Below are positions 1-52,995 of a stretch of 64,000 nt of DNA, in pieces. Within the stretch, counting starts at the first letter, position 1. Every line of letters begins with the position of its first letter. The position numbers were made by a program, and so were the translations under genes. The stretch is from Rebecca billardiae RCC1528. Lineage: Eukaryota; Protista; Haptophyta. The DNA is taken from contig OZ251255.1 in NCBI GenBank assembly GCA_965240325.2, forward strand, positions 1-64,000, given 5' to 3'. The notes under the pieces are model-generated. The model saw only the letters and a program-made list of their open reading frames with translations, had not been told where the DNA came from and did not search any database.

Positions 1-842
1 CCCTAACTAACCCTAACCCTAACCCTAACCCTAACCTAACCCTAACCCTAACCCCTAACCCTAACCCTAACCCTAACCCTAACCCTAACCCTAACCCTAA
101 CCCTAACCCTAACCCTAACCCTAACCCTAACCCTAACCCTAACCCTAACCTAACCCTAACCCTAACCCTAACCCTAACCCTAACCCTAACCCTAACCCTA
201 ACCCCTAACCCTAACCCTAACCCCTAACCCTAACCCTAACCCTAACCCTAACCCTAACCCTAACCCTAACCCTAACCCTAACCCTAACCCCTAACCCTAA
301 CCCTAACCCTAACCAACCCTAACCCTAACCCTAACCCTAACCCTAACCCCCCTAACCCTAACCCTAACCCTAACCCTAACCCTAACCCCTAACCCTAACC
401 CTAACCCTAACCCCTAACCCTAACCCTAACCCTAACCCTAACCCTAACCCTAACCCTAACCCTAACCCTAACCCTAACCCTAACCCTAACCCTAACCCTA
501 ACCCTAACCCTAACCCTAACCCCTAACCCTAACCCTAACCCTAACCCTAACCCTAACCCTAACCCTAACCCTAACCCTAACCCTAACCCCTAACCCTAAC
601 CCTAACCCTAACCCCTAACCCTAACCCTAACCCTAACCCTAACCCTAACCTAACCCTAACCCTAACCCTAACCCCTAACCCTAACCCTAACCCTAACCCT
701 AACCCTAACCCTAACCCTAACCCTAACCCTAACCCTAACCCTAACCCTAACCCTAACCCTAACCCTAACCTAACCCTAACCCTAACCCTAACCCTAACCC
801 TAACCCTAACCCTAACCCTAACCCTAACCCTAACCCTAACCC

Positions 843-920
<78 letters not shown>

Positions 921-1240
921 CCCTAACCCTAACCCTAACCCTAACCCTAACCCTAACCCTAACCCTAACCCTAACCCTAACCCTAACCCTAACCCTAACC
1001 CTAACCCTAACCCTAACCCTAACCCTAACCCTAACCCTAACCCTAACCCTAACCCTAACCTAACCCTAACCCTAACCCTAACCCTAACCCTAACCCTAAC
1101 CCTAACCCCTAACCCTAACCCTAACCCTAACCCTAACCCTAACCCTAACCCTAACCCTAACCCTAACCCTAACCTAACCCTAACCCTAACCCTAACCCTA
1201 ACCCTAACCCTAACCCTAACCCTAACCCTAACCCTAACCC

Positions 1241-1281
<41 letters not shown>

Positions 1282-1569
1282 CCCTAACCCTAACCCTAAC
1301 CCTAACCCTAACCCTAACCCTAACCCTAACCCTAACCCTAACCCCTAACCCTAACCCTAACCCTAACCCTAACCCCTAACCCTAACCCTAACCCTAACCC
1401 TAACCCTAACCCCTAACCCTAACCCTAACCCTAACCCTAACCCTAACCCTAACCCTAACCCTAACCCTAACCCTAACCCTAACCCTAACCCTAACCCCTA
1501 ACCCTAACCCTAACCCTAACCCTAACCCTAACCCTAACCCTAACCCTAACCCTAACCCTAACCCTAACC

Positions 1570-1601
<32 letters not shown>

Positions 1602-1667
1602 CTAACCCTAACCCTAACCCTAACCCTAACCCTAACCCTAACCCTAACCCTAACCCTAACCCTAACC

Positions 1668-1708
<41 letters not shown>

Positions 1709-1770
1709 CCCTAACCCTAACCCTAACCCTAACCCTAACCCTAACCCTAACCCTAACCCTAACCCTAACC

Positions 1771-1811
<41 letters not shown>

Positions 1812-2455
1812 CCCTAACCCTAACCCTAACCCTAACCCTAACCCTAACCCTAACCCTAACCCTAACCCTAACCCTAACCCTAACCCTAACCCTAACCCTA
1901 ACCCTAACCCTAACCCTAACCCTAACCCTAACCCTAACCCTAACCCTAACCCTAACCCTAACCCTAACCCCTAACCCTAACCCTAACCCTAACCCTAACC
2001 CTAACCCTAACCCTAACCCTAACCCTAACCCTAACCCTAACCCTAACCCTAACCCTAACCCTAACCCTAACCCTAACCCTAACCCTAACCCTAACCCTAA
2101 CCCTAACCCTAACCCTAACCCTAACCCTAACCCTAACCCTAACCCTAACCCTAACCCTAACCCTAACCCCTAACCCTAACCCTAACCCTAACCCTAACCC
2201 TAACCCTAACCCTAACCCTAACCCTAACCCTAACCCTAACCCTAACCCTAACCCTAACCCTAACCCTAACCCTAACCCTAACCCTAACCCTAACCCTAAC
2301 CCTAACCCTAACCCTAACCCTAACCCTAACCCTAACCCTAACCCTAACCCTAACCCTAACCCTAACCCTAACCCTAACCCTAACCCTAACCCTAACCCTA
2401 ACCCTAACCCTAACCCTAACCCCTAACCCTAACCCCTAACCCTAACCCTAACCTA
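1..2455 (-). repeat. Telomeric repeat tract (CCCTAA)n / (TTAGGG)n, chromosome end
   Basis: Continuous CCCTAA hexamers from base 1 with scattered 1-bp indels. Confidence 0.99.
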
Positions 2456-29885: not shown

Positions 29886-29994
29886 CGAATGTGCTTTCTG
29901 ATTGGTTGGAGGGTAGTTCGCCCGCCCGAATCTTGCAGTCGAATGTGCTTTCTGATTGGTTGGAGGGTAGTTTCGCCCGCCCGAATCTTGTAGT
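29886..29994. repeat. Two-copy 54-bp direct repeat containing ATTGG (CCAAT box on - strand)
   Basis: CGAATGTGCTTTCTGATTGGTTGGAGGGTAGTT... at 29886 and 29940. Confidence 0.9.
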
Positions 29995-30784: not shown

Positions 30785-31243
30785 ATGGCGTTGGGCCAGT
30801 GCGTGCAGGTCGCGAATGGCACGCCCTACACGTTCAAGCAGACGTCCGCGCACCAGTACCAGATGAACCAATGGGGCCCTTTCCCGGACGCCATCGCGCC
30901 CGGGGCAGCTCCCGTGACGTACTACGAGTTCGACTTTGGCCAGTTCGACATCGGGTTTGACAAGGACGACGACGGCGCCGACGTGACGTACTCAATCGAC
31001 GGCAGCAAGTCCTTCACGTACCACGCGGGCCCCATGTACAAGCCGGTCGCCGAGCTGGAGGGCTGGGCGGTGACCAACGGTGGCAGCAGCTTTGAAATCC
31101 ACCCGTCGCCCACCATCCCGTGCGCAGGCGACAACATCACGTACTGGCTGAAGATCAACGGCTCGGGCGACGCGCTGAGCATCGTCACGACCAACGTGCC
31201 CCAGCCCGAGAACTTCAAGCCTCGCGGGGGGCCCGTGCCCTGA
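30785..31243 (+). CDS. Intronless 152-aa beta-rich protein, possibly aegerolysin/Cry34-like beta-sandwich
   Basis: GCCATGG start context, strong GC3 codon bias, non-low-complexity sequence; NGTPYTFKQTSAHQYQMNQWGPFPDAIAPG motif. Confidence 0.75.
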   Translation: MALGQCVQVANGTPYTFKQTSAHQYQMNQWGPFPDAIAPGAAPVTYYEFDFGQFDIGFDKDDDGADVTYSIDGSKSFTYHAGPMYKPVAELEGWAVTNGGSSFEIHPSPTIPCAGDNITYWLKINGSGDALSIVTTNVPQPENFKPRGGPVP

Positions 31244-31972: not shown

Positions 31973-32391
31973 GATGATAGCTACTCCGGACCGACGACGG
32001 CACACGGCGGGGCAGTCACAGTTTACTAAGAATAAAAGACGCACACAGCTCAGGCAGTACAGTCGAACGATTCGTGTGCGTCGGTCCGGAGTAGTCCGAC
32101 TAGTCCGCGTGCACGGCCACTAGGCGCGTGGCAGCCGCCGGCCCCGGCCGCGCGGTCCGCGCGGACCCGGAGCCGCGCCGTGTGCGGTCGTCGGTCGTAG
32201 CTATCATCTGCTGCCGATACGCTGGCATCTGCTGCCGGCGGGCTGCCGTGTGCCGTCGTCGGTCGTAGCTATCATCCGCGCATGCGCGTGTGCGCGCCGC
32301 GCGGACCGCGCGGCGGGCCGGCGGCTGACGCGCCTTCCACGGACTAGTCGGACTACTCCGGACCCGCACACTCGACTGTGACTGCCCCGCC
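31973..32391. repeat. Nested inverted and direct repeats immediately 3' of the GAPDH stop codon
   Basis: Perfect 25-bp inverted repeat 32083-32107 / 32340-32364; 32-bp direct repeat at 32177 and 32246; reverse-complement matches in 31973-32022. Confidence 0.85.
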
Positions 32392-32397
32392 GCCGCG

Positions 32398-33444
32398 TCA
32401 CGCGCCGCCCAGCCGCGCCACCCTGCGCGCGAGCTCGGCCAGCCGGTTGCTGTACCCCCACTCGTTGTCGTACCAGCAGTACAGCTTGAGCTGCGTGCCG
32501 CCCACGACGAGCGTGGACGAGGCATCGATGATGGTCGAGCGCGCGTCGTTGCAGTAGTCGGCGGCGGTGAGCAGGCGCTCCTCGACGCCGAGGATGCCCT
32601 TGAGCTCGGCGGCGGCCGCCGCCTTCGCCAGCTCGTTGATCTCCTCGCGCGTCACCTCGCGCGCCATCTCGAGCGTGATGTCCGTCATCGACGCGGTCGC
32701 GAGCGGCACGCGCACGGCAAAACCGTTCAGCTTGCCCTTCAGCTCGGGGATCACCTCGCCCACGGCCTTGGCGGAGCCGGTGGTGGTGGGGTAGAAATTG
32801 TTCACCGCGCCGCGCGCGCGCCGCGGCTCCTTCTCCGCGCACCACGGCGCGTCGAGCACGCTCTGCGTGTTGGTGAGGCAGTGGATCGTCGTGATCGAGC
32901 CGTGCCGCACGCCCACGCGCCGGTGGAGCAGGTGGATGACCGGCGCGATGCAGTTGGTCGTGCACGAGGCGGCGGTGACGATGCGGTGCTTCTTCGGCTC
33001 GTAGGCCTGCTCGTTCACGCCGAGCACCACGTTGGGCACGCCCTCGTCCTTCACCGGCGCCGACACGACCACCTTCTTCGCGCCGTTGGCGAAGAAGGGC
33101 TCGAGCTTGGCGGCCGAGTTGTGCGCGCCCGTGCACTCGATGACGACGGTGACGCCGAGCTCCTTGAGCGGCACGTCGGCGGGCGACTTGGCCTGCAGGA
33201 AGCGCACGCGCTTGCCGCCGATCACGACCGCGTCCTTCTCCGCCTTCACCTTGCCCGCCTTCCACGTGCCGTGGTGCGTGTCAAACTCGGTGAGGTACGC
33301 CGCCGTGGCGGCGTCCGCGGCGATCTCGTTGATGGCGACGACGTTGAGCTCGGAGTGGTCGAAGAGCGCGCGCATCGTCAGCCGGCCGATCCGGCCGTAC
33401 CCGTTGATCAGCGCCTTGGGCTTGCCGAGCAGCGAGGGCGCCAT
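32398..33444 (-). CDS. gapdh: ArsJ-associated (bacterial arsenate-resistance type) glyceraldehyde-3-phosphate dehydrogenase, intronless
   Basis: GYGRIGR, HRIVTAASCTTNCIAPV, HGSITTIH, TNTQSVLDAP, PTTTGSAKA, WYDNEWGY. IVTAASC, HGSITTIH, PTTTGSA and 'VVGGTQLKLY' match the ars-operon GAPDH clade as I recall it, not cytosolic GapC. Confidence 0.92.
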   Translation of the reverse strand: MAPSLLGKPKALINGYGRIGRLTMRALFDHSELNVVAINEIAADAATAAYLTEFDTHHGTWKAGKVKAEKDAVVIGGKRVRFLQAKSPADVPLKELGVTVVIECTGAHNSAAKLEPFFANGAKKVVVSAPVKDEGVPNVVLGVNEQAYEPKKHRIVTAASCTTNCIAPVIHLLHRRVGVRHGSITTIHCLTNTQSVLDAPWCAEKEPRRARGAVNNFYPTTTGSAKAVGEVIPELKGKLNGFAVRVPLATASMTDITLEMAREVTREEINELAKAAAAAELKGILGVEERLLTAADYCNDARSTIIDASSTLVVGGTQLKLYCWYDNEWGYSNRLAELARRVARLGGA

Positions 33445-33589
33445 GGCGCACTGAATCCACGCTGATCGCGACGTGGGCGTGCAGATTCGCCGACGGCCAA
33501 GTGTTGACGCTCGGCTTTCTAATTCTCCGTCAAAGCTGCGCCGGAACCCGTAGTTCATCAGCGAGTGCCGGTGCGAACCGGTGTATAGG
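33445..33589. promoter_or_regulatory. Putative bidirectional promoter between gapdh and arsJ (145 bp)
   Basis: Head-to-head ATGs at 33444 (-) and 33590 (+); inference from geometry. Confidence 0.55.
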
Positions 33590-34480
33590 ATGGCGGCGAA
33601 CGCGACGGCGGCGGCGCGGCCGGGCTCAAGCCGTTCGTCGTGATCTCCATCTCGTACCTCCGCTGTACACCGTGACCGACGGCGGCGTGTGCATGGTCGT
33701 GCTGCTGCACGCGTACACCAAGGGCTTCACCGCGATGGAGGTGGCCGTCATGTTCACGCTGTACGAGCTCGCGGGCGTGGTGACGAACATCGCGGCGGGG
33801 ATGCTGGGCGACCGGTGGGGGATCCGGTGGACCCTCCTCGCCGGCCTCACGCTGCAGCTCTGCGGCCTCGCCATGCTGATGGGCTGGCAAGACGGCTGGG
33901 GCCGCGGCACGGCGATCGCGTACGTCACGCTCGCGCAGATGCTGTGCGGCATCGCCAAGGACCTGACCAAGCTCGGGGGCAAGACGGTGACGAAGCTGGT
34001 GACGCCCGACGAGATGCAGTCCCGCCTCTTCAAGCTCGTCGCGCTGCTCACCGGCTGGAAGAACGCGCTCAAGGGCGTGGGCTACTTCCTGGGCGCCGCG
34101 CTGATCGGCGCGCACGACGCGTGGGGGTACCACACCGCGCTCGGCGCCATGCTCGGGCTGGTGGCGCTCGCGTACCCGTGGGCGGCGTTCGGGCTGGACG
34201 CGCGGCTGGGCACCGCCGCCAAGGCCCCCGCCACGCTGCGCCAGATCCTGCTCAACAAGAGCTACACCCTGAACACGCTCTCGCTCGCGCGCACGTTTCT
34301 GTTTGGCTCGCGCGACCTCTGGTTCGAGGTGCCGCTGCCCTTCCCTCTTCCTGCGCGACGGCACGTACGGGCTGGGGCTGCGGCGCGAGGTGGTCGGCGC
34401 GCTCCTCGCGCTGTACATCATCGTGTACGGCCAGATGCAGTCGTACACGCCGCAGCTCGTCTCCGCGCCGCTGCGGCGCC
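33590..34480 (+). pseudogene. arsJ: ArsJ-family MFS organoarsenical (1-arseno-3-phosphoglycerate) exporter, frameshifted and C-terminally truncated as assembled
   Basis: YTVTDGG..MVVLLH, FTLYELAGVVTN, GIAKDLTK, LFKLVALLTGWKNALKGVGYFLG, LSLARTFLFGSRDLWFEVPLP, YGQMQSYTPQL. Frame changes near 33615, 33661 and 34345; homology stops near 34478. Confidence 0.85.
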
Positions 34481-34731
34481 GCGCCGCGCCGCGCCGCGCC
34501 GCGCCGCCGCGCGCCCCCCCCTCTCCCGCCGCGCAGGTCCGAGGTCGCGCCCAGCTGATGAGTCCGGCACGCAGATCCGCGCGATATCGAGATCGAGGGC
34601 GCCGCGCGCTGCGCCGCGCATGCCGCCGCCTAGCAGTAGAGTAGATGACGCGATCGAGAGTAGTAGCAGACGACACATCATATCATCATGTCGTCATATA
34701 TCGTCATCATCGCGTAGTAGTCATCGTCAGA

Positions 34732-36450
34732 TAGGGGGGCCAAAGTGGCACTGTGACGTGACTGACGGCTACGAGCGCTGGTCCTAGCGAGTGTTTAGCG
34801 CTGATTTCGGGCTGGATCATTTGCCCTCTGGAGGGGTCTGGGCCAGCCAAGTAAAAATATCAGGTGCACATACCCTGAATATAGGGCGTAACGGCTAGCA
34901 GATTTACTTATTAGAATGAGCCTGAACTTATTGGAAACGGCATGTAACGGCCGTCTTATATGTGGCATATAGACCATGTCGACCTCACTTTGATAGAGCA
35001 TCTCAGCAAGATTGTTCTGAGTCCCCAGCAGCAGCAGGTCCCAACATGCGATATAGGCTGTGTACCTGGCAGGCTGTCAAACACGTAGTTTCCCGGAAGC
35101 CACTGGTCGTTACATACCCACCGTGTATATAGCCGCCATGCTGATGAATACAGTCTCGTCGGATCTCGAGCTGCGAGATACGTTTTCAGACTGTGTATAC
35201 GGCCATGCGTACGGCGTATTGCAGACATGATGGACTCAAAGCACCGGCCCCATGTCCTCAGCCCGGGAGTACTCTCGGTCATAGTCAAGGTTTAAAGTCA
35301 CTCGAGCCAACCGTCACCGCTCCCTGGCCGAGACCTACGAGGCAGGTCAAATCTGTCGTCGTCGCAGTGCGGCACAGTGCCGAGGCATGCGATTCGGCAG
35401 CAAACGCCTGCTCCAGGTGGTGGCTGGCGTCTCTGCACCAAACCAGGCTGCATAGGATCGGTCCATATAGGTACGCCCTACCCTGTTCCGCGCTATTTCT
35501 GGGCTTTGGGGCGGATATTCGGCCTACAGAGGCTGATCCGGCGCTGTTTCGTGCTCCTGGCTGGCTGCGCGGGGCCCAACGGCAAGCGCCGGCGTGTGCA
35601 AGGTGTCAAGATTGAGACGGTCTCTGACGCTCCCGCCGGTCTTGGGCGCACCAGGGTGCATGGGGGCCCATCTGCATCTGCTTCTGCAGGCATGCGCGTC
35701 ACAGGGGCGCGCTTGCAGGCACGGTCGAGTGCACGTCGGACCTGTCGAATGAGCCATCCGCTGCCTGCGAGCACGTCCGCGACGTCCTGAGAGGCGAACG
35801 GGAGGCGCCCCGACGCCATCTGGGGGCACGTGTGACCCATACCCAACGTGCTGACCATCGCAAGTGCCACGGCAGGTGCAAACACGGGCCCTACGAGCGG
35901 AACATGACAGTTGCGGGCTCCGTGGAGGTGTTGTGCGCGAGCTCGCGCCGGTCTGCTGACGGCGATTCCGGCCCAGCAGGGCAGGTTAGGCGAGCTGGGC
36001 ATCCACGGATACACATGCACACTTGGGGCGAGTATCGATCTCGGCGGGGCGAGTTGATCTTGAGCCACAAGGAGCGGTAGCGTGACGGGCGTACGCAGCG
36101 CGACAATGCAAGCCGGCCGACGCGCGCCGCGCACGGCGCGAGGTGGCCAAGAACCGGGTGGTGAGCCGCTGGTGGCGCAAAAACAAGGGTCAGAAGCGCC
36201 CACCAGCGTCACGCGCGCGCGCGCCCGAGACCATCTCGGCGTCTCATGGGACGCGAGCGCGCGGCGGTCCACTGCCTCCGGCCGCTCGTGCTCGAGCGAA
36301 ACCGAGCTCTGAGCGCCCGAAGGCGTCGGAGCTCGATTTTCGAGCGAGGTCCGAGAAAAGGCTCCGGCGCCACCCCAAAAGGCCGAGGGTGGAGCGAAAA
36401 TGCGCCGCGGCTTTGATTTTCTTTTTCAAATGGGCGGTTTGGCCCCCCTA
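34732..36450. mobile_element. Putative non-autonomous DNA transposon, about 1.7 kb
   Basis: TAGGGGGGCCAAA (34732-34744) and TTTGGCCCCCCTA (36438-36450): 11-bp TIR plus flanking TA, or 13-bp TIR. Interior is lower in GC with no host-type gene. Confidence 0.6.
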
Positions 36451-36546
36451 AATTCGTCATCGTCGTCACTGTGTGCTGCTCGCTGCTGACGATCGCGGCT
36501 ACTGTACATCAGTGTCAGTGGCGCGCATCGAGTCGTCGCATCGACT

Positions 36547-36586
36547 ATCTATATATATATATCTATATATATATATCGTCTATATA
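36547..36586. repeat. (TA)n-rich microsatellite
   Basis: Read directly. Confidence 0.85.
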
Positions 36587-36821
36587 GTGACTATACTGTA
36601 GTCGTCACGCGCGCGGCATCGATCTGCTGCTGCCGTCTTCGCGTCGTCGTCTGCCGCGACGAGCGCGATAAGAGGCGCTGCGAATAATTCATATCAAACG
36701 GCATCGCTGCCTGGTGCTGCTGCTGCTGCTCGCGGGCGGCTGCAGCTGCGGTCGATCGATCGCGCGACGATGCGCCAGCCCGACGTGCCGCCGCGCCGCC
36801 GCGCCGCGCCGCGCGCGCCGC

Positions 36822-38938
36822 CTACTTGCGCGGGTCGAGGACGGCGATGTCCTTCTCGTCGAAGAGGCGCGGCACGACGTACAGCCGCACGGGCACGAGC
36901 GCGGCGATGAGGAACGGCATCGCGCCGCCCGCGCCGACGTAGCGCAGCACGATGATCACGACGAAGCACGCGAGCTGCAGGCAGGTGAACTTGTGGATCG
37001 TCGGCACCTCGAGCTGCTCCACCCACTCCTCGTCCGGCCACCGGTCCATCTCCCACGTGGCGAAGAGCCACATGCGCGTGAACATGTTGTTGCCGCGGAT
37101 CGACGACATGCCGAGGTAGAGGAAGATGCCGATGATGAGGTACTGCGGCACGAGCTTGAGCAGCGGCGTGAGCGCGAGCGAGACGAACATGAAGAGGTGC
37201 ACGATCAGGTGCGTGAAGCGCTGCTCGACCATGCCGACGATGCGCGTCTCGCGGTTGCCCTCCTCGTCCGTGACCGTCTCGTAGATCGTGAGCGCGAAGA
37301 CGTGCGCGAGCGAGCGCACGGTCGCGGCGTGCGTGAAGGGCAGGCCGATCAGCGAGAGCAGCGGGTACATGCCCGCGCCGCACACGAACAGGTCGAGGTG
37401 GTAGCCTGCGGGGCGGTCGGCGCGGCGTTCGGCGCGAGGCGGTGAGCGCGCGGCGCTGCCGCTGCGCGCGCGCGCGCGGGTTGGGCGCGGCCGCCGCAGG
37501 CGGCCGCGGCGCGCGCACCGGGCGACTTCTTCCAGAGGCGCTCGCGCTTGTTCACGATCACCTCCGTCAGGTTCTGGTCGAGGTAGCCGAGGATCGTCAG
37601 GCCGGCGGCGAACGGGATGGTGAGGAACACCGCCCAGAACTGAGCCGGGCGCGGGGCGTGAGCGCGAGGGCGGGGGCGTGAGCGCGGGGTCGAGGGGGCG
37701 AGGGGGCCGAGGGCGCGCACCGCGCGCGCCCGCCGCCCGCGCGGCGCGCGCACCGGCAGCGGCTTCTCGATGCCCGACGGGTCGACCATCCACGGGCGCG
37801 GCGCGCCGTTGGCGAGCGACATGGTGGGCCGGACCGAGTCGGGCACGTTGAGGAACTGCAGGTCGGCGATGCCCAGCGCGGGGATGACGAGGTTGGTGAT
37901 GAGCGTGCCGAGGAAGATCACGATCACCACGCCGTAGTTCGAGATGTGCTTGCGCCACGTCTTGTTGAACCAGTCGGACGCGCGCAGGTCGCGGAACTTG
38001 ACGCACGAGATGTACGTGACGCCCGTCAGGATGGCCGAGAAGAGCTGCGTGCCGATCGTGCGGTCGGAGAGGAAGACGCGGATGATGGCGGTGAGCGCGG
38101 CGGCGATCTCGAGCACCGAGACGATCGACGAGAAGATCTCCTCCGTGAACTGCGTCACGTACTTCATCAGCGCGCACCAGTCGAGCACGGCGCACAGCAC
38201 GGTCATGAGCGCGGTGAACATGCCCTGCCACCAGCGCGCGGGCAGGAACTCGACGCCGAGCTGCTGGCAGATCTGGTAGAAGACGATGGTGTACGCGAGC
38301 TCGGGGCCGGTCGCGCCCATGATCGTGAGCGGCTGCCCCGAGAAGAGCGCGTAGATCACGCCGCAGATCGCCGTGGAGAGCACCGTCTCGATGATGCCGA
38401 TCTGGCCCTCGGTCGCAATGTCGAAGAGCGCGCCGAACGCGAGCGCGGGCGCGTAGCACGCGAAGAAGAGGAAGATCGAGGCGGGCGCGACCATCGCAAA
38501 GTTGCCGTTGGTGAACGCGTCCGTCCAGTCCGAGACGTACGTCTTCGGGTTGAGCCGCCGCTTGATGTCGATCATGAGGCCGCCGAGCACCCACTTGCCC
38601 GACCACTCGAGCGGGCCGGGCATGCCGTCGCCCTCCCACGGGTCGACGATGGTCTGCTTCTTGGCGCCCGACTCGGGGTCGGTCGTCGTCTTCACCGGCG
38701 GCGTCGGCGCGACGGGCGTCATCTGCGGCGTCTTCTTCTCGCCCGAGTTGCGCCGCGAGCGGTTGTTGACGGGCGTCTTGCCGCGCGAGCCCGCGCGCGA
38801 GCGCTCGCGCGAGCGGCCGTACGCGGGCGAGGCCTCGGGCGGCGGGAGGTGGTCGCCGACGGGGATGCCCATGTTGCGGCGGTGGTCGTCGATCTGGTCG
38901 TTGTAGGGCATGTCGCCGCTCGCGTTGAAGGTGGACAT
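36822..38938 (-). CDS. SLC4 / BOR1-type anion (borate/bicarbonate) transporter; introns 37640-37753, 37406-37518; an upstream intron 38951-39149 may add an in-frame exon starting at 39281
   Basis: DIKRRL..YVSDWTDA, FLFFACYAPALAFG, FSGQPLTIMGATGP, TQFTEEIF, YHLDL, HAATVRSLAH, EQRFT, IFLYLG. Confidence 0.93.
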
Positions 38939-40363
38939 GGCTTCACAGACCTGCGGCGCGCGCCGAGCGGGCTGTCGCGACGCGGGGCGGCGGCGGCGGC
39001 GCGCGCGCGCGTCGCGCGGAGGGAGCGGGGGCGGCGTGAGCGCGAGGCGCGGCGCGGTGGGCGGCGTCGGCGCGCGCGCGCGAGGCGCGCCCGCGGATGG
39101 TCGCGCGCGCGCGCTGGTCGCGCGCGCGAGGACGGGCGCGCGGACGCACCTTGGGTGGAAGGAAGGTCGGATGCTCGTCGAGCTCGGGATGACCGGCTGT
39201 TGACGCGTCCAAGAGCTTTGCAGTGCTGTGGTCGTCAGCACAGCCTTTGGGGAGCGCTTGATGCCCCGAGATTCCGCGCATCTTTCAGCCAAGGGCCTTG
39301 TTTCAGCCCACTAGCGGCATGCAAGCGGCCTCAAACGCGCCTATTCCCCACTAATGTTTTGCGGCGGTAAAACATGACTAGGCGCAGCACACCGAGGCTT
39401 CGGCGCGCAGGTATGGTGCACGAGACCTTGATCCGCACCACCGCTGATGAGCCGAAGTGGGCGTGCCGGTATGTGCGCCTGGCTCATGTTGCTATCCCAA
39501 ATGGGCAATCGGAGTACCCATCAGGATATTCATCTCTCGGCTCACGACGCTGTGCCGAGCGATGAACAGCTCGAAGTCGAGTGCGCCCTTTCATCATCAA
39601 TGCTTGAGGGCGCATCGCGATTCTTCGGTTGGAAAGCGAAGAATACATGCCAAGCCGAAACGCCTTGCGTATGGGGGTACAGGGGTTCCCAGAGGAAGCC
39701 TGGCGGGCGTGAATGCCCGTCCAGGCGCGTGTGGCACGTCCGGGACCGGGGGGCGTGCCACACGCCGGTCGGCGTCGACGTCAGAGCACGTGAGACTTAG
39801 TAGTGGCCTTCCCTTACGACCACTCTCACGTCCACGCCCACGTCATCGTGCGACCGGCGCCGGCACGGTGTCGGTGAGTTCGCGGATGGCGCCGTGCCGC
39901 GGGCTGTGCGGCCTCGTCGACTGAATTGTCCGCGCGGGGCCTGACTCGCCGGCGGGGACCGGGCCGGATCGGGGCAAGTAGCGCCTAGCGGGCAGGATGT
40001 AATCGTTCTGATGGCCGTGCTGACCTCTGGGGCATGCCAGGCGATGGTGCCGTCCTATGAATGATCGGCTCGTCCCTGACGGCGGGTCTGTTATTTTATA
40101 TTCGGACGGTCCCACCAGCGCTAGCCCTGAGCCTGACGGTCGACGATCCGTGAATCACTCAATCAGTTCTAAGCCGGCTTAGCGTCGTAGTCGTGCCCCC
40201 CGGATCACGGACCACGCCACGCAGCGCCGATATTTGGCGACGACGTATCGCGGCGCCCGCCGGCGCAATGCCCGTCCAGAGGCCGCGACGGACGTGCCGC
40301 ACTATACCTGGCCAGCCAGCAAGTACCCGCCACCATCTGATGGCCGTACCGTAGGCCAGGGCC

Positions 40364-51609: not shown

Positions 51610-52995
51610 ATGGCGACGCCGATGGCGTGCAACGCGGTGACCTGCGCCGGCCTCTGCTGCGCGGGCTTCACCCTCCTCGCCGCCACCGCCGTCCTCGGCT
51701 TCGCGCTGCCGCCGCAGCTGCAGCCGCAGCGCGACCAGTTCACGGCGCTCTTCCGCGACTACGGCGGCGGCGGCGAGGGGGGCGGCGACGGCGCGCGCGC
51801 GTCGTCGAGCAGCTGGGGCGCACCGTCGGAGCTCTTCTCCAAGATGCACAAGACGTGGAAGGAGATGCCCGACGTGCCCATCGGCATCGACCCCGAGCTG
51901 CCGCCGTCGATCGAGGACAAGCTCGACGCCGTCGAGCCGCAGGGCGGGCCCGAGTCGTGGGGGATCGACCGGATCGACCAGCGCGCCACGCCGCTGGACC
52001 ACGCGTACACGCCCAAGTACCTGGGCGACGGCATCCACGTCTTCGTCCTCGACACGGGCGTGTACGACGACCACGTCGAGTTTGGGACTCGGATCGGGCT
52101 GGGCGCCAACTGCGTCGACGTGGGCGCGGGCAAGGACTGCGACCCGGCGCTGCCCACGGACGACAAGAACGGGCACGGCACGCACGTGGCGTGCACCGCC
52201 GCCTCCGGCCCGTACGGCGTCGCGCCGCACGCCGTCGTCCACCCCGTCAAGGTGCTCGGCGACGACGGCGCGGGCGGCGTGGGCGGCGTGATCAAGGGGA
52301 TGGAGTGGGTGGGGCGGCTGGTGAAGGGACAGCGGTGGGAGGGCAAGGCGGTGGCGGTGATGTCGCTGGGCACGCCGCTCTCGCGCGCGCTGAACGAGAA
52401 CGCCGACGCGCTCGTCCACGCCGGCGTCCCCGTCGTCGTCGCCGCGGGCAACCAGGGCGCGGACGCGTGCGAGTACTCGCCCGCGTCCGCAGACGCGGTC
52501 ATCTCTGTGGGCGCGACCAACGCCAAGGACCGCCTGCCGTCCTTCACGAACTGGGGGCCGTGCGTGGACATCCTCGCGCCGGGCTCGTCGATCAACTCGT
52601 GCTCGATCAAGCACGACTCGGGCGACACGCGCAAGTCGGGCACCTCGATGGCCGCGCCGCACGTGGCCGGCGTGGTCGCGCAGCTGCTGCAGCAGGCGAT
52701 GGCGGAGGAGGGGCGGCGGCTCGACCCGGCGGCGGTGCGCGAGCGGCTGCTGGCCATCGCGGCGAAGAACGAGGTGGTGATCAAGGACGGGCAGAAGAAG
52801 TCGACGGTGACCGCGCTGCTGCAGATCCCCGCGCTCTCCGGCGCGCAGACCGCCAAGCCGCTCGCCACCACCTCGCAGCTCTGGCTCGTCGCGATCGGCG
52901 CGCTCGGCATGTGCGTGTGCGCGTGCGCGTGCGCGCTCAAGGCGTGGCTCGACCGCGACAAGGACGAGGGCGAGGAGAAGCTCGAGCTCGCCTGA
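51610..52995 (+). CDS. Subtilisin S8A (proteinase K-like) serine protease with N-terminal signal/anchor and C-terminal TM helix, intronless
   Basis: SWGIDRIDQR, VLDTG, GHGTH, VVAAGN, GTSMAAPHVAG; catalytic triad intact. Confidence 0.95.
   Translation: MATPMACNAVTCAGLCCAGFTLLAATAVLGFALPPQLQPQRDQFTALFRDYGGGGEGGGDGARASSSSWGAPSELFSKMHKTWKEMPDVPIGIDPELPPSIEDKLDAVEPQGGPESWGIDRIDQRATPLDHAYTPKYLGDGIHVFVLDTGVYDDHVEFGTRIGLGANCVDVGAGKDCDPALPTDDKNGHGTHVACTAASGPYGVAPHAVVHPVKVLGDDGAGGVGGVIKGMEWVGRLVKGQRWEGKAVAVMSLGTPLSRALNENADALVHAGVPVVVAAGNQGADACEYSPASADAVISVGATNAKDRLPSFTNWGPCVDILAPGSSINSCSIKHDSGDTRKSGTSMAAPHVAGVVAQLLQQAMAEEGRRLDPAAVRERLLAIAAKNEVVIKDGQKKSTVTALLQIPALSGAQTAKPLATTSQLWLVAIGALGMCVCACACALKAWLDRDKDEGEEKLELA

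What the first reader, a model, noticed from the sequence alone, without database searches (positions are those of the whole stretch)
32398..34480. Bacterial arsenate-detox module (gapdh + arsJ) present as a head-to-head gene pair on a eukaryotic chromosome
Seen: an intact intronless GAPDH and an intronless ArsJ-like MFS gene whose ATGs are 145 bp apart and divergent, among host genes that mostly carry several introns. Established: in bacterial ars operons a dedicated GAPDH forms 1-arseno-3-phosphoglycerate from arsenate and ArsJ exports it; the two genes are adjacent and co-oriented. This GAPDH carries that clade's signatures as I recall them (IVTAASCTTNC, HGSITTIH, TNTQ, PTTTGSA). Inference: a horizontally acquired two-gene pathway whose linkage survived by conversion from an operon to a bidirectional-promoter pair, with codon usage now matching the host. 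Algal ArsJ homologues may already be reported, so novelty of this arrangement needs a literature check.
Basis: partly seen in the sequence, partly recalled or inferred. Interest (0 to 1): 0.92.

Follow-up and report, generated by a model that had tools for sequence, protein, structure and literature searches.

The report
Algal arsenate gene pair, half decayed
Near a chromosome end of a very GC-rich haptophyte alga sits a copy of the bacterial-type arsenate-detox gene pair (special GAPDH plus ArsJ exporter) already described in green algae; here the GAPDH is intact but the exporter gene is a recent pseudogene, so this is a new lineage for a known module, not a new kind of system.

Summary
An intact, intronless 348-aa GAPDH lies at 32398-33444 (-). 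An intronless ArsJ-like MFS gene starts at 33590 (+). They are divergent, with 145 bp between the ATGs.

The GAPDH passes NCBIfam's ArsJ-associated-GAPDH model (455.5 bits, cut-off 450). It sits inside that clade with 100/100 support.

The MFS gene matches only ArsJ, but it is broken. It has three frame changes, two of them a +2 and a +4 insertion. Homology ends at 34476, and the last third or so of the protein is encoded nowhere in the window.

The pair is not a recent or private acquisition:
- GC3 is 0.98-1.0, like the host genes.
- The nearest relatives of both genes are haptophytes.
- Pavlovales sp. CCMP2436 has the same head-to-head pair, with introns.
- Chlorella sorokiniana and an unidentified, probably eukaryotic, scaffold are head-to-head too.
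- Eukaryotic ArsJ forms one clade.

The green-algal ArsJ-GAPDH3-PGK neighbourhood, its proposed bacterial origin and the arsenate-sensitive Chlamydomonas arsJ mutant were published in 2020 (PMC7826186). I found no report for haptophytes.

Diacronema lutheri (two loci) and Emiliania huxleyi keep this GAPDH with no arsJ within 8 kb. An unchecked first-reader note of this scan (s1-350536) reports a second head-to-head pair elsewhere in this genome.

No reads of this genome were available, so the frame changes are not independently confirmed.

Verdict: new member of a known kind, of modest interest.

The parts
32398..33444 (-). ArsJ-associated-type GAPDH (algal 'GAPDH3' type): intact, intronless, 348 aa, stop codon at 32398-32400
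   Evidence: The ORF is open and carries Gp_dh_N and Gp_dh_C. NF033735 scores 455.5 bits against a cut-off of 450. It lies inside the ArsJ-associated clade with 100/100 support. The catalytic Cys161 and His188, the phosphate-site arginines and the clade signatures are present. GC3 is 0.983.
33445..33589 (.). 145-bp spacer between the two divergent start codons; a candidate shared (bidirectional) promoter, inferred only
   Evidence: Read directly from the sequence. GC is 0.61, against 0.98 GC3 in the flanking coding DNA. No expression data were available.
33590..34476 (+). arsJ pseudogene: ArsJ-like MFS reading frame in four pieces, corresponding to about the first 300 of 467 residues of the CCMP2436 orthologue
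   Evidence: tblastn with the haptophyte ArsJ proteins P0121-P0123 gives three collinear pieces in frames 1, 3 and 1. The three-frame translation shows the same. NF033734 ArsJ scores 223.5 bits over profile positions 13-233, plus positions 239-271 in the other frame. DNA identity to the relative L004 is 84%.
33596..33625 (+). Frame change 1: the ATG at 33590 is in frame 2, but homology (GLKPFVVISISYL) runs in frame 1. The shift lies somewhere in a GCG-rich tract. The internal Met that relatives have at 'MPF' is AAG here.
   Evidence: Three-frame translation. Comparison with the N-terminus of L004.
33661..33662 (+). Frame change 2: two extra bases relative to L004, moving frame 1 to frame 3
   Evidence: blastn alignment with L004. 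The pieces end at 33660 and restart at 33663.
34344..34347 (+). Frame change 3: four extra bases (CCTC) inside the conserved WFEVPLPF/FLRD motif, moving frame 3 to frame 1
   Evidence: blastn alignment with L004. The pieces end at 34343 and restart at 34348.
34477..34540 (+). End of ArsJ homology. The coding sequence runs into a GC-rich low-complexity tract (CGCCGCG-type). About the last third of ArsJ (residues ~301-467 of the orthologue, the C-terminal transmembrane part) is absent.
   Evidence: tblastn finds no C-terminal piece anywhere in the 64-kb window. blastn identity to L004 stops at 34477. The repeat family D11 lies at 34464-34504.
36822..39292 (-). Flanking host gene: SLC4-type HCO3-/borate transporter, with exons in different frames (context, not part of the module)
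   Evidence: Pfam HCO3_cotransp profile positions 3-169 fall in one frame and 352-548 in another. GC3 is 0.99-1.0.
1..2000 (.). Telomeric (CCCTAA)n array, which places the pair about 30 kb from a chromosome end (context)
   Evidence: Sequence. Composition: GC 0.50 and GC skew -1.0.

Best explanation
This is a subtelomeric copy of the algal ArsJ/GAPDH3 arsenate-detoxification gene pair in a Pavlovales-type haptophyte.

The pair descends from the bacterial gapdh-arsJ operon. In that system a dedicated GAPDH joins arsenate to glyceraldehyde-3-phosphate, making 1-arseno-3-phosphoglycerate, and the MFS permease ArsJ exports it. The pair entered eukaryotes long ago, most simply once. It was then ameliorated to host codon usage and gained introns independently in different lineages. 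In several lineages it is kept as a divergent, head-to-head pair.

At this locus only the GAPDH is still a complete gene. arsJ was inactivated recently by small insertions and by loss of its 3' third, so the locus cannot export the arseno-ester by itself. The GAPDH may work with an arsJ encoded elsewhere in the genome, or it may have a role that does not need ArsJ, as the gene content of Diacronema suggests.

Shown here: family membership, gene order, the lesions, host-like codon usage, conservation of the pair in a relative, and faster protein change on the arsJ branch.

Inferred: the biochemical activity, a shared promoter, a single eukaryotic origin, and the GAPDH still being in use.
For: GAPDH family. 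NF033735 scores 455.5 bits against a cut-off of 450. The 38-row ArsJ-associated clade has 100/100 support. It holds the window gene, six haptophyte sequences, Chlamydomonas GAPDH3 (Cre07.g354200, identified) and every bacterial GAPDH that I verified as arsJ-adjacent. The clade-specific residues and the catalytic Cys and His are present.

ArsJ family. The only strong NCBIfam hit is ArsJ. The orthologue P0121 scores 394.6 bits over the full profile. The eukaryotic ArsJ clade has 100/99 support, and the haptophyte subclade that includes the window copy also has 100/99.

Old and eukaryotic. GC3 is 0.98-1.0, equal to the host SLC4 gene. The CCMP2436 locus L003 has the same head-to-head pair, with three introns in arsJ and one in GAPDH. 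Chlorella L019 and scaffold L021 are head-to-head too. The arsJ introns of L003 and L004 sit 14 nt apart, and the window copy has neither. Monophyly of the eukaryotic GAPDHs is not rejected (AU p = 0.245). All eukaryotic members carry 3 extra residues in the S-loop that 25 of 25 bacterial ones lack.

Pseudogene. The gene has three frame changes, two of them a +2 and a +4 insertion that are not homopolymer slips, and the C-terminal third is absent from the whole window. Relative-rate counts are 11 unique changes on the window branch against 2 on the sister (p = 0.02) for ArsJ, and 25 against 14 (p = 0.11) for GAPDH. The ArsJ terminal branch is 0.39 against 0.04 for its sister.

Recent inactivation. 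arsJ still has GC3 of 0.99, and pairwise dN/dS against L004 is 0.16.

Function of the module in algae. The Chlamydomonas arsJ and pgk3 mutants are arsenate-sensitive (PMC7826186).
Against: No DNA or RNA reads of this organism could be listed. The one run laid on the region only showed other organisms' GAPDH motifs. The frame changes therefore rest on the assembly alone, and the telomere tract shows small irregularities that may be assembly noise.

The GAPDH passes its HMM cut-off by only 5 bits. It has 6 changes at positions that are invariant in the other haptophyte copies, including K171H where all 21 bacterial sequences have K. It may therefore be under relaxed constraint too.

The ArsJ orthologues of eukaryotes all fall below NCBIfam's 400-bit equivalog cut-off (271-395 bits).

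The free tree places Chlamydomonas GAPDH3 with alphaproteobacteria (80/88) rather than with haptophytes, so a single eukaryotic origin is allowed but not shown.

The second pair in this genome is only an unchecked first-reader note.
Confidence: 0.75

Rival explanations
1. The whole locus is a dying duplicate. The GAPDH is also no longer used and has simply not yet been hit by a disabling mutation. The functional pair, if there is one, is the other copy in the genome.
For: The locus is subtelomeric. arsJ is already dead. The window GAPDH has 6 private changes at positions invariant in the other haptophyte copies, including K171H. There is a non-significant excess of unique changes, 25 against 14. 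A scan note reports a second pair elsewhere (unchecked).
Against: The 1,047-bp ORF is fully open, while the 890-bp neighbour has collected three indels. The catalytic and phosphate-site residues are intact. The relative-rate test is not significant. Diacronema keeps two such GAPDHs with no arsJ within 8 kb and has no annotated ArsJ among the top hits, so an orphan GAPDH can be maintained.
Confidence: 0.15
2. arsJ is really intact and the module works at this locus. On this view the frame changes and the truncation are assembly artefacts in very GC-rich DNA.
For: No reads could be checked. The telomere tract contains small irregularities typical of long-read consensus noise. The first frame change lies in a GCG repeat. 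arsJ keeps GC3 of 0.99 and dN/dS of 0.16.
Against: Two of the three shifts are +2 and +4 insertions in non-homopolymer sequence. About 165 C-terminal codons are missing from the whole 64-kb window, which a base-calling error cannot cause. The adjacent GAPDH and the SLC4 exons show no frame errors. Protein change is significantly faster on this arsJ branch.
Confidence: 0.07
3. The segment is a recent direct transfer from a bacterium into this alga, or a bacterial contaminant joined to algal DNA by misassembly.
For: Both genes lack introns, and both belong to families named after a bacterial operon.
Against: The closest GAPDHs are haptophyte genes at 71-79% identity, against 49-58% for bacteria. 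The closest ArsJ proteins are haptophyte ones at 76-87%, against about 41% for Shewanella. GC3 is 0.98, like the host, against 0.58-0.72 in bacteria. The orientation is divergent, unlike all 14 bacterial loci examined. The orthologous pair in CCMP2436 carries introns.
Confidence: 0.02

Closest known systems
Green-algal ArsJ-GAPDH3-PGK3/4 gene neighbourhood (Foflonker & Blaby-Haas, Mol Biol Evol 2020/21, PMC7826186)
   Same: It has the same two families next to each other on a eukaryotic chromosome. Chlamydomonas GAPDH3 (Cre07.g354200) falls in the same 100/100 clade as the window GAPDH. Green-algal ArsJ falls in the same 100/99 eukaryotic ArsJ clade. Chlorella sorokiniana has the pair head-to-head as here. 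The authors proposed acquisition from bacteria as a functional unit, and showed that the Chlamydomonas arsJ mutant is arsenate-sensitive.
   Different: The host here is a haptophyte, which that paper does not mention and which no paper in the library links to ArsJ. No PGK-like gene lies in the 64-kb window. In Chlamydomonas, GAPDH3 and ArsJ are tail-to-tail, and PGK3 is the head-to-head partner of GAPDH3. Here arsJ is a pseudogene and both genes lack introns.
Bacterial gapdh-arsJ operon (Chen, Yoshinaga, Garbinski & Rosen 2016, Pseudomonas aeruginosa; NCBIfam NF033735 and NF033734)
   Same: The GAPDH passes the NF033735 cut-off and carries the clade's signature residues. The MFS gene matches only NF033734. 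The two genes are immediate neighbours.
   Different: In bacteria the genes are co-oriented and, where I called the ORFs, translationally coupled, with spacing from -73 to +5 bp. Here they are divergent with a 145-bp spacer. Identity to bacterial proteins is only 49-58% for GAPDH and about 41% for ArsJ. The eukaryotic GAPDHs have a 3-residue S-loop insertion. Eukaryotic ArsJ proteins fall below the 400-bit equivalog cut-off.
Orthologous pair in Pavlovales sp. CCMP2436 (GCA_026770615.1, scaffold MU631376.1; locus L003)
   Same: It has the same head-to-head layout. Its ArsJ is 77% identical and its GAPDH 72% identical to the window's.
   Different: There both genes are complete: ArsJ is 467 aa with three introns, and GAPDH is 352 aa with one intron. 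The spacer is 539 bp. The window copy has no introns and a broken arsJ.
Orphan ArsJ-type GAPDHs of Diacronema lutheri (KFE25_012292, KFE25_005626) and Emiliania huxleyi CCMP1516
   Same: They belong to the same haptophyte GAPDH clade, with 100/100 support. The Diacronema genes are also intronless.
   Different: No arsJ lies within 8 kb at any of the three loci. The window shows what may be the intermediate state, with a decaying arsJ still attached.

Membership tests
ArsJ-associated GAPDH (NCBIfam NF033735) | Whole-protein score at or above the curated cut-off, and higher than for other GAPDH models | tested here: met
   The score is 455.5 bits against a cut-off of 450. The next model, PRK08955, scores 433.7 against its cut-off of 563. 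The margin is small. The haptophyte orthologues score 430-466 bits.
ArsJ-associated GAPDH (NCBIfam NF033735) | Phylogenetic placement with GAPDHs that are physically linked to arsJ | tested here: met
   The window gene lies in a 100/100 clade with 7 GAPDHs that I verified as arsJ-adjacent and 14 that NCBI names ArsJ-associated. More than 100 other GAPDH representatives fall outside it.
ArsJ-associated GAPDH (NCBIfam NF033735) | Catalytic Cys and His and the phosphate/arsenate-site arginines are intact | tested here: met
   C161, H188, R208, R211 and R245 are conserved, and the signatures T157, A158, H181, S183, T193 and S224 are present.
ArsJ-associated GAPDH (NCBIfam NF033735) | Forms 1-arseno-3-phosphoglycerate from arsenate | not testable with these tools
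   This needs an enzyme assay.
ArsJ organoarsenical efflux MFS permease (NCBIfam NF033734) | Whole-protein score at or above the 400-bit equivalog cut-off | tested here: not met
   The window pieces score 223.5 and 18.1 bits. The intact orthologue P0121 scores 394.6, and green-algal and diatom homologues score 271-371. ArsJ is nevertheless the only strong hit for all of them.
ArsJ organoarsenical efflux MFS permease (NCBIfam NF033734) | Complete, translatable 12-helix MFS reading frame | tested here: not met
   The gene has three frame changes, and homology ends at profile position ~271 of 392. The C-terminal third is absent from the window.
ArsJ organoarsenical efflux MFS permease (NCBIfam NF033734) | Encoded next to its dedicated GAPDH | tested here: met
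   The start codons are 145 bp apart. The orientation is divergent rather than co-oriented.
Algal ArsJ-GAPDH3-PGK neighbourhood (PMC7826186) | ArsJ belongs to the eukaryotic ArsJ clade that contains the Chlamydomonas/Volvox/Chlorella proteins | tested here: met
   The eukaryotic clade has 100/99 support, and the window copy lies inside its haptophyte subclade.
Algal ArsJ-GAPDH3-PGK neighbourhood (PMC7826186) | GAPDH is of the GAPDH3 type (same origin as Cre07.g354200) | tested here: inconclusive
   Both lie in the ArsJ-associated clade (100/100), but they are not sisters in the free tree. Monophyly of the eukaryotic GAPDHs is not rejected (AU p = 0.245), and all share a +3-residue S-loop expansion.
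Algal ArsJ-GAPDH3-PGK neighbourhood (PMC7826186) | A PGK-like (PGK3/PGK4) gene in the neighbourhood (present in most, not all, green algae) | tested here: not met
   tblastx of the Chlamydomonas PGK3 gene region against the 64-kb window gave no HSP of 40 bits or more. The CCMP2436 locus has no gene with a PGK domain on record either.

The most novel reading that the evidence does not exclude
In haptophytes the ArsJ-type GAPDH has acquired a role that does not need ArsJ. On this reading arsJ has been lost repeatedly (Diacronema, with two orphan paralogues, and Emiliania), and this locus catches such a loss in progress. The eukaryotic pair would have a single origin and would have moved between algal lineages (green algae, haptophytes and others) as a compact head-to-head two-gene cassette.
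Probability: 0.3. Interest if true: 0.45.

Novelty: new member of a known kind. Interest (0 to 1): 0.3.

Why it matters
This extends a published eukaryotic gene neighbourhood of bacterial origin, the ArsJ-GAPDH3 arsenate efflux pair, from green algae to haptophytes. The same divergent layout recurs in distant algae, which bears on how operon-derived pathways stay linked in eukaryotes.

The decayed arsJ beside an intact GAPDH, together with the orphan GAPDHs in Diacronema and Emiliania, gives a concrete and testable question: does this GAPDH have a job of its own in marine algae? In those waters arsenate competes with scarce phosphate.

For genome annotation, the MFS gene here should be called a pseudogene, and the GAPDH should not be annotated as a glycolytic enzyme.

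Tried and rejected
1. Reads. Two run searches found none for the 2.7-kb stretch and one freshwater metatranscriptome holding 4% of the GAPDH words. Laying that run gave only short, 85-95% matches to conserved GAPDH motifs from other organisms. It says nothing about this genome.

2. The rest of arsJ. tblastn with three haptophyte ArsJ proteins found no C-terminal piece anywhere in the window. A repeat search found no flanking long repeats or duplicated arms that would explain the truncation.

3. Introns instead of frame changes. I rejected this because the homologous pieces abut within 2-4 nt, with no room for an intron.

4. Synteny of the flanks with CCMP2436, Diacronema and Emiliania by tblastx. 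The output was low-complexity GC-rich noise and unusable. blastn showed only the pair itself, plus a peptidase-S8 similarity at 51.9-52.8 kb.

5. Metagenome scan for more haptophyte-type loci. It returned only the transcript contig I already had, plus bacterial loci.

6. Search of scan findings by sequence for the second copy. It came back blank.

7. The long upstream ATG at 33558 as the GAPDH start. I rejected this because homologues start at the position of the ATG at 33444, and the extension would run into the arsJ 5' end.
Full report
**What is in the sequence**

The window starts with about 2 kb of (CCCTAA)n, so it is a chromosome end. It is extremely GC-rich, 62-88% per kb.

- An open 1,047-bp frame at 32398-33444 (-) encodes a 348-aa protein with both GAPDH Pfam domains.
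- On the + strand an ATG at 33590 opens an MFS-like gene.
- The two ATGs are separated by 145 bp (33445-33589) and the genes diverge.
- The right-hand neighbour is an SLC4-type transporter gene at 36822-39292 (-). Its Pfam profile is split between two reading frames, so it has introns.

**Family of the GAPDH**

- NCBIfam's best model is NF033735, ArsJ-associated GAPDH, at 455.5 bits against a curated cut-off of 450. The general type I model scores 363.
- A search of 5.8 billion proteins gave haptophyte proteins first: an environmental transcript at 79%, Diacronema lutheri at 73%, and Pavlovales sp. CCMP2436 and Emiliania huxleyi at 72%. After those came a long list of bacterial proteins at 53-58%, most of them named ArsJ-associated GAPDH.
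- I fetched 12 bacterial loci by similarity. All have arsJ directly downstream and co-oriented, with spacing from -73 to +5 bp. Celeribacter and Thermosynechococcus have the same arrangement.
- In a 138-row tree with 110 representatives of the wider GAPDH family, and in a careful 55-row tree (LG+C20), the window protein lies in a haptophyte clade (100/100). That clade lies inside a 100/100 clade holding all the arsJ-linked bacterial enzymes.
- The catalytic Cys161 and His188 and the arginines of the phosphate sites are present.
- Seven positions separate arsJ-linked enzymes from the 102 other GAPDH representatives (T157, A158, H181, S183, T193, S224, T254; six of them are rare in the others). 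All seven have the arsJ-linked state here.

**Family and state of the MFS gene**

The only strong NCBIfam hit is NF033734, ArsJ. It covers profile positions 13-233 in one frame and 239-271 in another.

tblastn with haptophyte ArsJ proteins and a DNA alignment with a close relative (L004, 84% identical) show four lesions:

1. The ATG at 33590 is in frame 2, but the homology from 33622 runs in frame 1. The shift lies in a GCG-rich tract.
2. Two extra bases at 33661-33662.
3. Four extra bases (CCTC) at 34344-34347, inside the conserved WFEVPLPF/FLRD motif.
4. Homology stops at 34476-34477, about residue 300 of 467. The sequence then becomes a CGCCGCG-type tract, and no C-terminal piece exists anywhere in the window.

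The pieces abut within 2-4 nt, so these are not introns.

The protein has changed faster on this branch than on its sister: 11 unique changes against 2 (p = 0.02), and a terminal branch of 0.39 against 0.04. The GAPDH shows no significant asymmetry, at 25 against 14 (p = 0.11).

The decay is recent. GC3 is still 0.99, although non-coding DNA here is about 60% GC, and pairwise dN/dS against L004 is 0.16.

I could not check the lesions against reads. None was listed for this genome, and the one metatranscriptome laid on the region held only other organisms' GAPDH motifs.

**Origin**

Codon usage is fully host-like. GC3 is 0.983 for GAPDH and 0.99-1.0 for the SLC4 exons, against 0.58-0.72 in bacterial homologues.

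The pair is older than this species, and linkage varies among relatives:

- In Pavlovales sp. CCMP2436, a complete ArsJ gene (467 aa, three introns) and the GAPDH (one intron) are head-to-head, 539 bp apart.
- The first arsJ intron of CCMP2436 and the intron retained in L004 sit 14 nt apart, and the window copy has neither. This fits an ancestrally intron-free gene that gained introns separately.
- Chlorella sorokiniana has a GAPDH-domain gene and the ArsJ-like gene head-to-head, 205 bp apart.
- An unidentified GC-rich scaffold (L021), probably eukaryotic, has a 627-aa ArsJ-like gene with poly-N and poly-E inserts head-to-head with the sister of the haptophyte GAPDHs.
- In Chlamydomonas the two genes are tail-to-tail, and PGK3 is the head-to-head partner of GAPDH3.
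- A diatom, Skeletonema, has the ArsJ-like gene without a GAPDH neighbour.

ArsJ-like proteins of haptophytes, diatoms, a cryptophyte, a diplonemid and green algae form one 100/99 clade, well apart from the sampled bacterial ArsJ.

For the GAPDH, Chlamydomonas GAPDH3 (identified) is in the same ArsJ-associated clade but is not sister to the haptophytes in the free tree. Forcing all eukaryotes together costs 5 log-likelihood units and is not rejected (AU p = 0.245). All eukaryotic members have three extra residues in the S-loop that all 25 bacterial members lack. A single ancient entry into eukaryotes is therefore the simplest reading, but it is not proven.

**What is known already**

Foflonker & Blaby-Haas (PMC7826186) described the ArsJ-GAPDH3-PGK3/4 neighbourhood of green algae. 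They proposed that GAPDH and ArsJ came from bacteria as a unit, and they showed that Chlamydomonas arsJ and pgk3 mutants are arsenate-sensitive.

Cho et al. (PMC9812998) found arsJ alone in Cyanidiales and reported that eukaryotic arsJ is monophyletic.

Neither mentions haptophytes. A full-text search for ArsJ with haptophyt* returned only an unrelated bacterial paper. The green-algal paper does not discuss gene orientation.

The kind is therefore known. The haptophyte instance, the recurrence of the divergent layout, and the half-decayed state are small additions.

**Loss of linkage in haptophytes**

Diacronema lutheri has two paralogous GAPDHs of this clade, 89% identical to each other. Neither has an arsJ within 8 kb, and no Diacronema ArsJ appeared among the ArsJ hits although its proteome is in the database.

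Emiliania's GAPDH also lacks a neighbouring arsJ.

The window locus looks like an intermediate stage of the same process. This suggests, but does not show, that the GAPDH is useful without a linked ArsJ.

A first-reader note of this scan (s1-350536) reports another head-to-head pair on another piece of this genome. I could not reach that DNA.

**Verdict**

But the event is ancient, it is shared with other algae, and it is already published for green algae. At this locus the exporter is dead.

Novelty: new member of a known kind. Interest: 0.3.

Noticed in passing
L021:3789-7131 (ENA metagenome scaffold SONG20-1 scaffold_6235): An unidentified scaffold with 62% GC, probably eukaryotic, carries a very divergent 627-aa ArsJ-like gene with poly-N and poly-E inserts. 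It is head-to-head with a 376-aa GAPDH that is sister to the haptophyte clade. A Na/Pi cotransporter gene lies 2 kb away; phosphate transporters are the usual entry route of arsenate.
   Followed up: partly
L001:7788-7967 (Diacronema lutheri JAGTXO010000011.1): A 60-codon GAPDH-like fragment (residues ~63-122, 48-55% identical) lies just upstream of the complete KFE25_012292 GAPDH. It looks like a remnant of a partial tandem duplication.
   Followed up: no
P0241 (ENA contig of 15.7 kb; not in the window): The top-scoring representative in the 1.84-billion-protein search is a 2,089-aa predicted protein with five GAPDH-like stretches (596 bits).
   Followed up: no
window 32072-32107 / 32340-32375 and 32177-32211 / 32245-32279: In the 3' flank of the GAPDH there is a 36-nt inverted repeat (89% complementary, arms 232 nt apart). 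Between its arms lies a 35-nt direct repeat (94% identical). The inner arm starts 23 nt after the stop codon.
   Followed up: no
window 29886-29918 / 29940-29972: A perfect 33-nt direct repeat, with copies starting 54 nt apart, in a lower-GC stretch left of the module.
   Followed up: no
window 30785-31243 (+): A coding-looking 152-aa ORF (GC3 0.91) with no Pfam match, about 1.2 kb beyond the GAPDH 3' end.
   Followed up: partly
window 34790-36700: About 2 kb of comparatively low-GC DNA (about 62%) with no convincing ORF lies between the truncated arsJ and the 3' end of the SLC4 gene. It may be relevant to how the arsJ 3' part was lost. No repeat arms were found.
   Followed up: partly
window 32828-32836 (GAPDH residues 201-203, WCA) and the homologous loop in P0243, P0246, P0252: All eukaryotic ArsJ-type GAPDHs examined have three extra residues in the S-loop between D198 and R208. 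All 25 bacterial arsJ-linked enzymes lack them. This is a possible shared derived character, although the loop also varies in length in a few other GAPDHs.
   Followed up: partly
window 51945-52754: This stretch is 70% identical at DNA level to the peptidase-S8 gene that lies directly downstream of the GAPDH in Diacronema (L001:9530-10327). It may be loose synteny or only family similarity.
   Followed up: no
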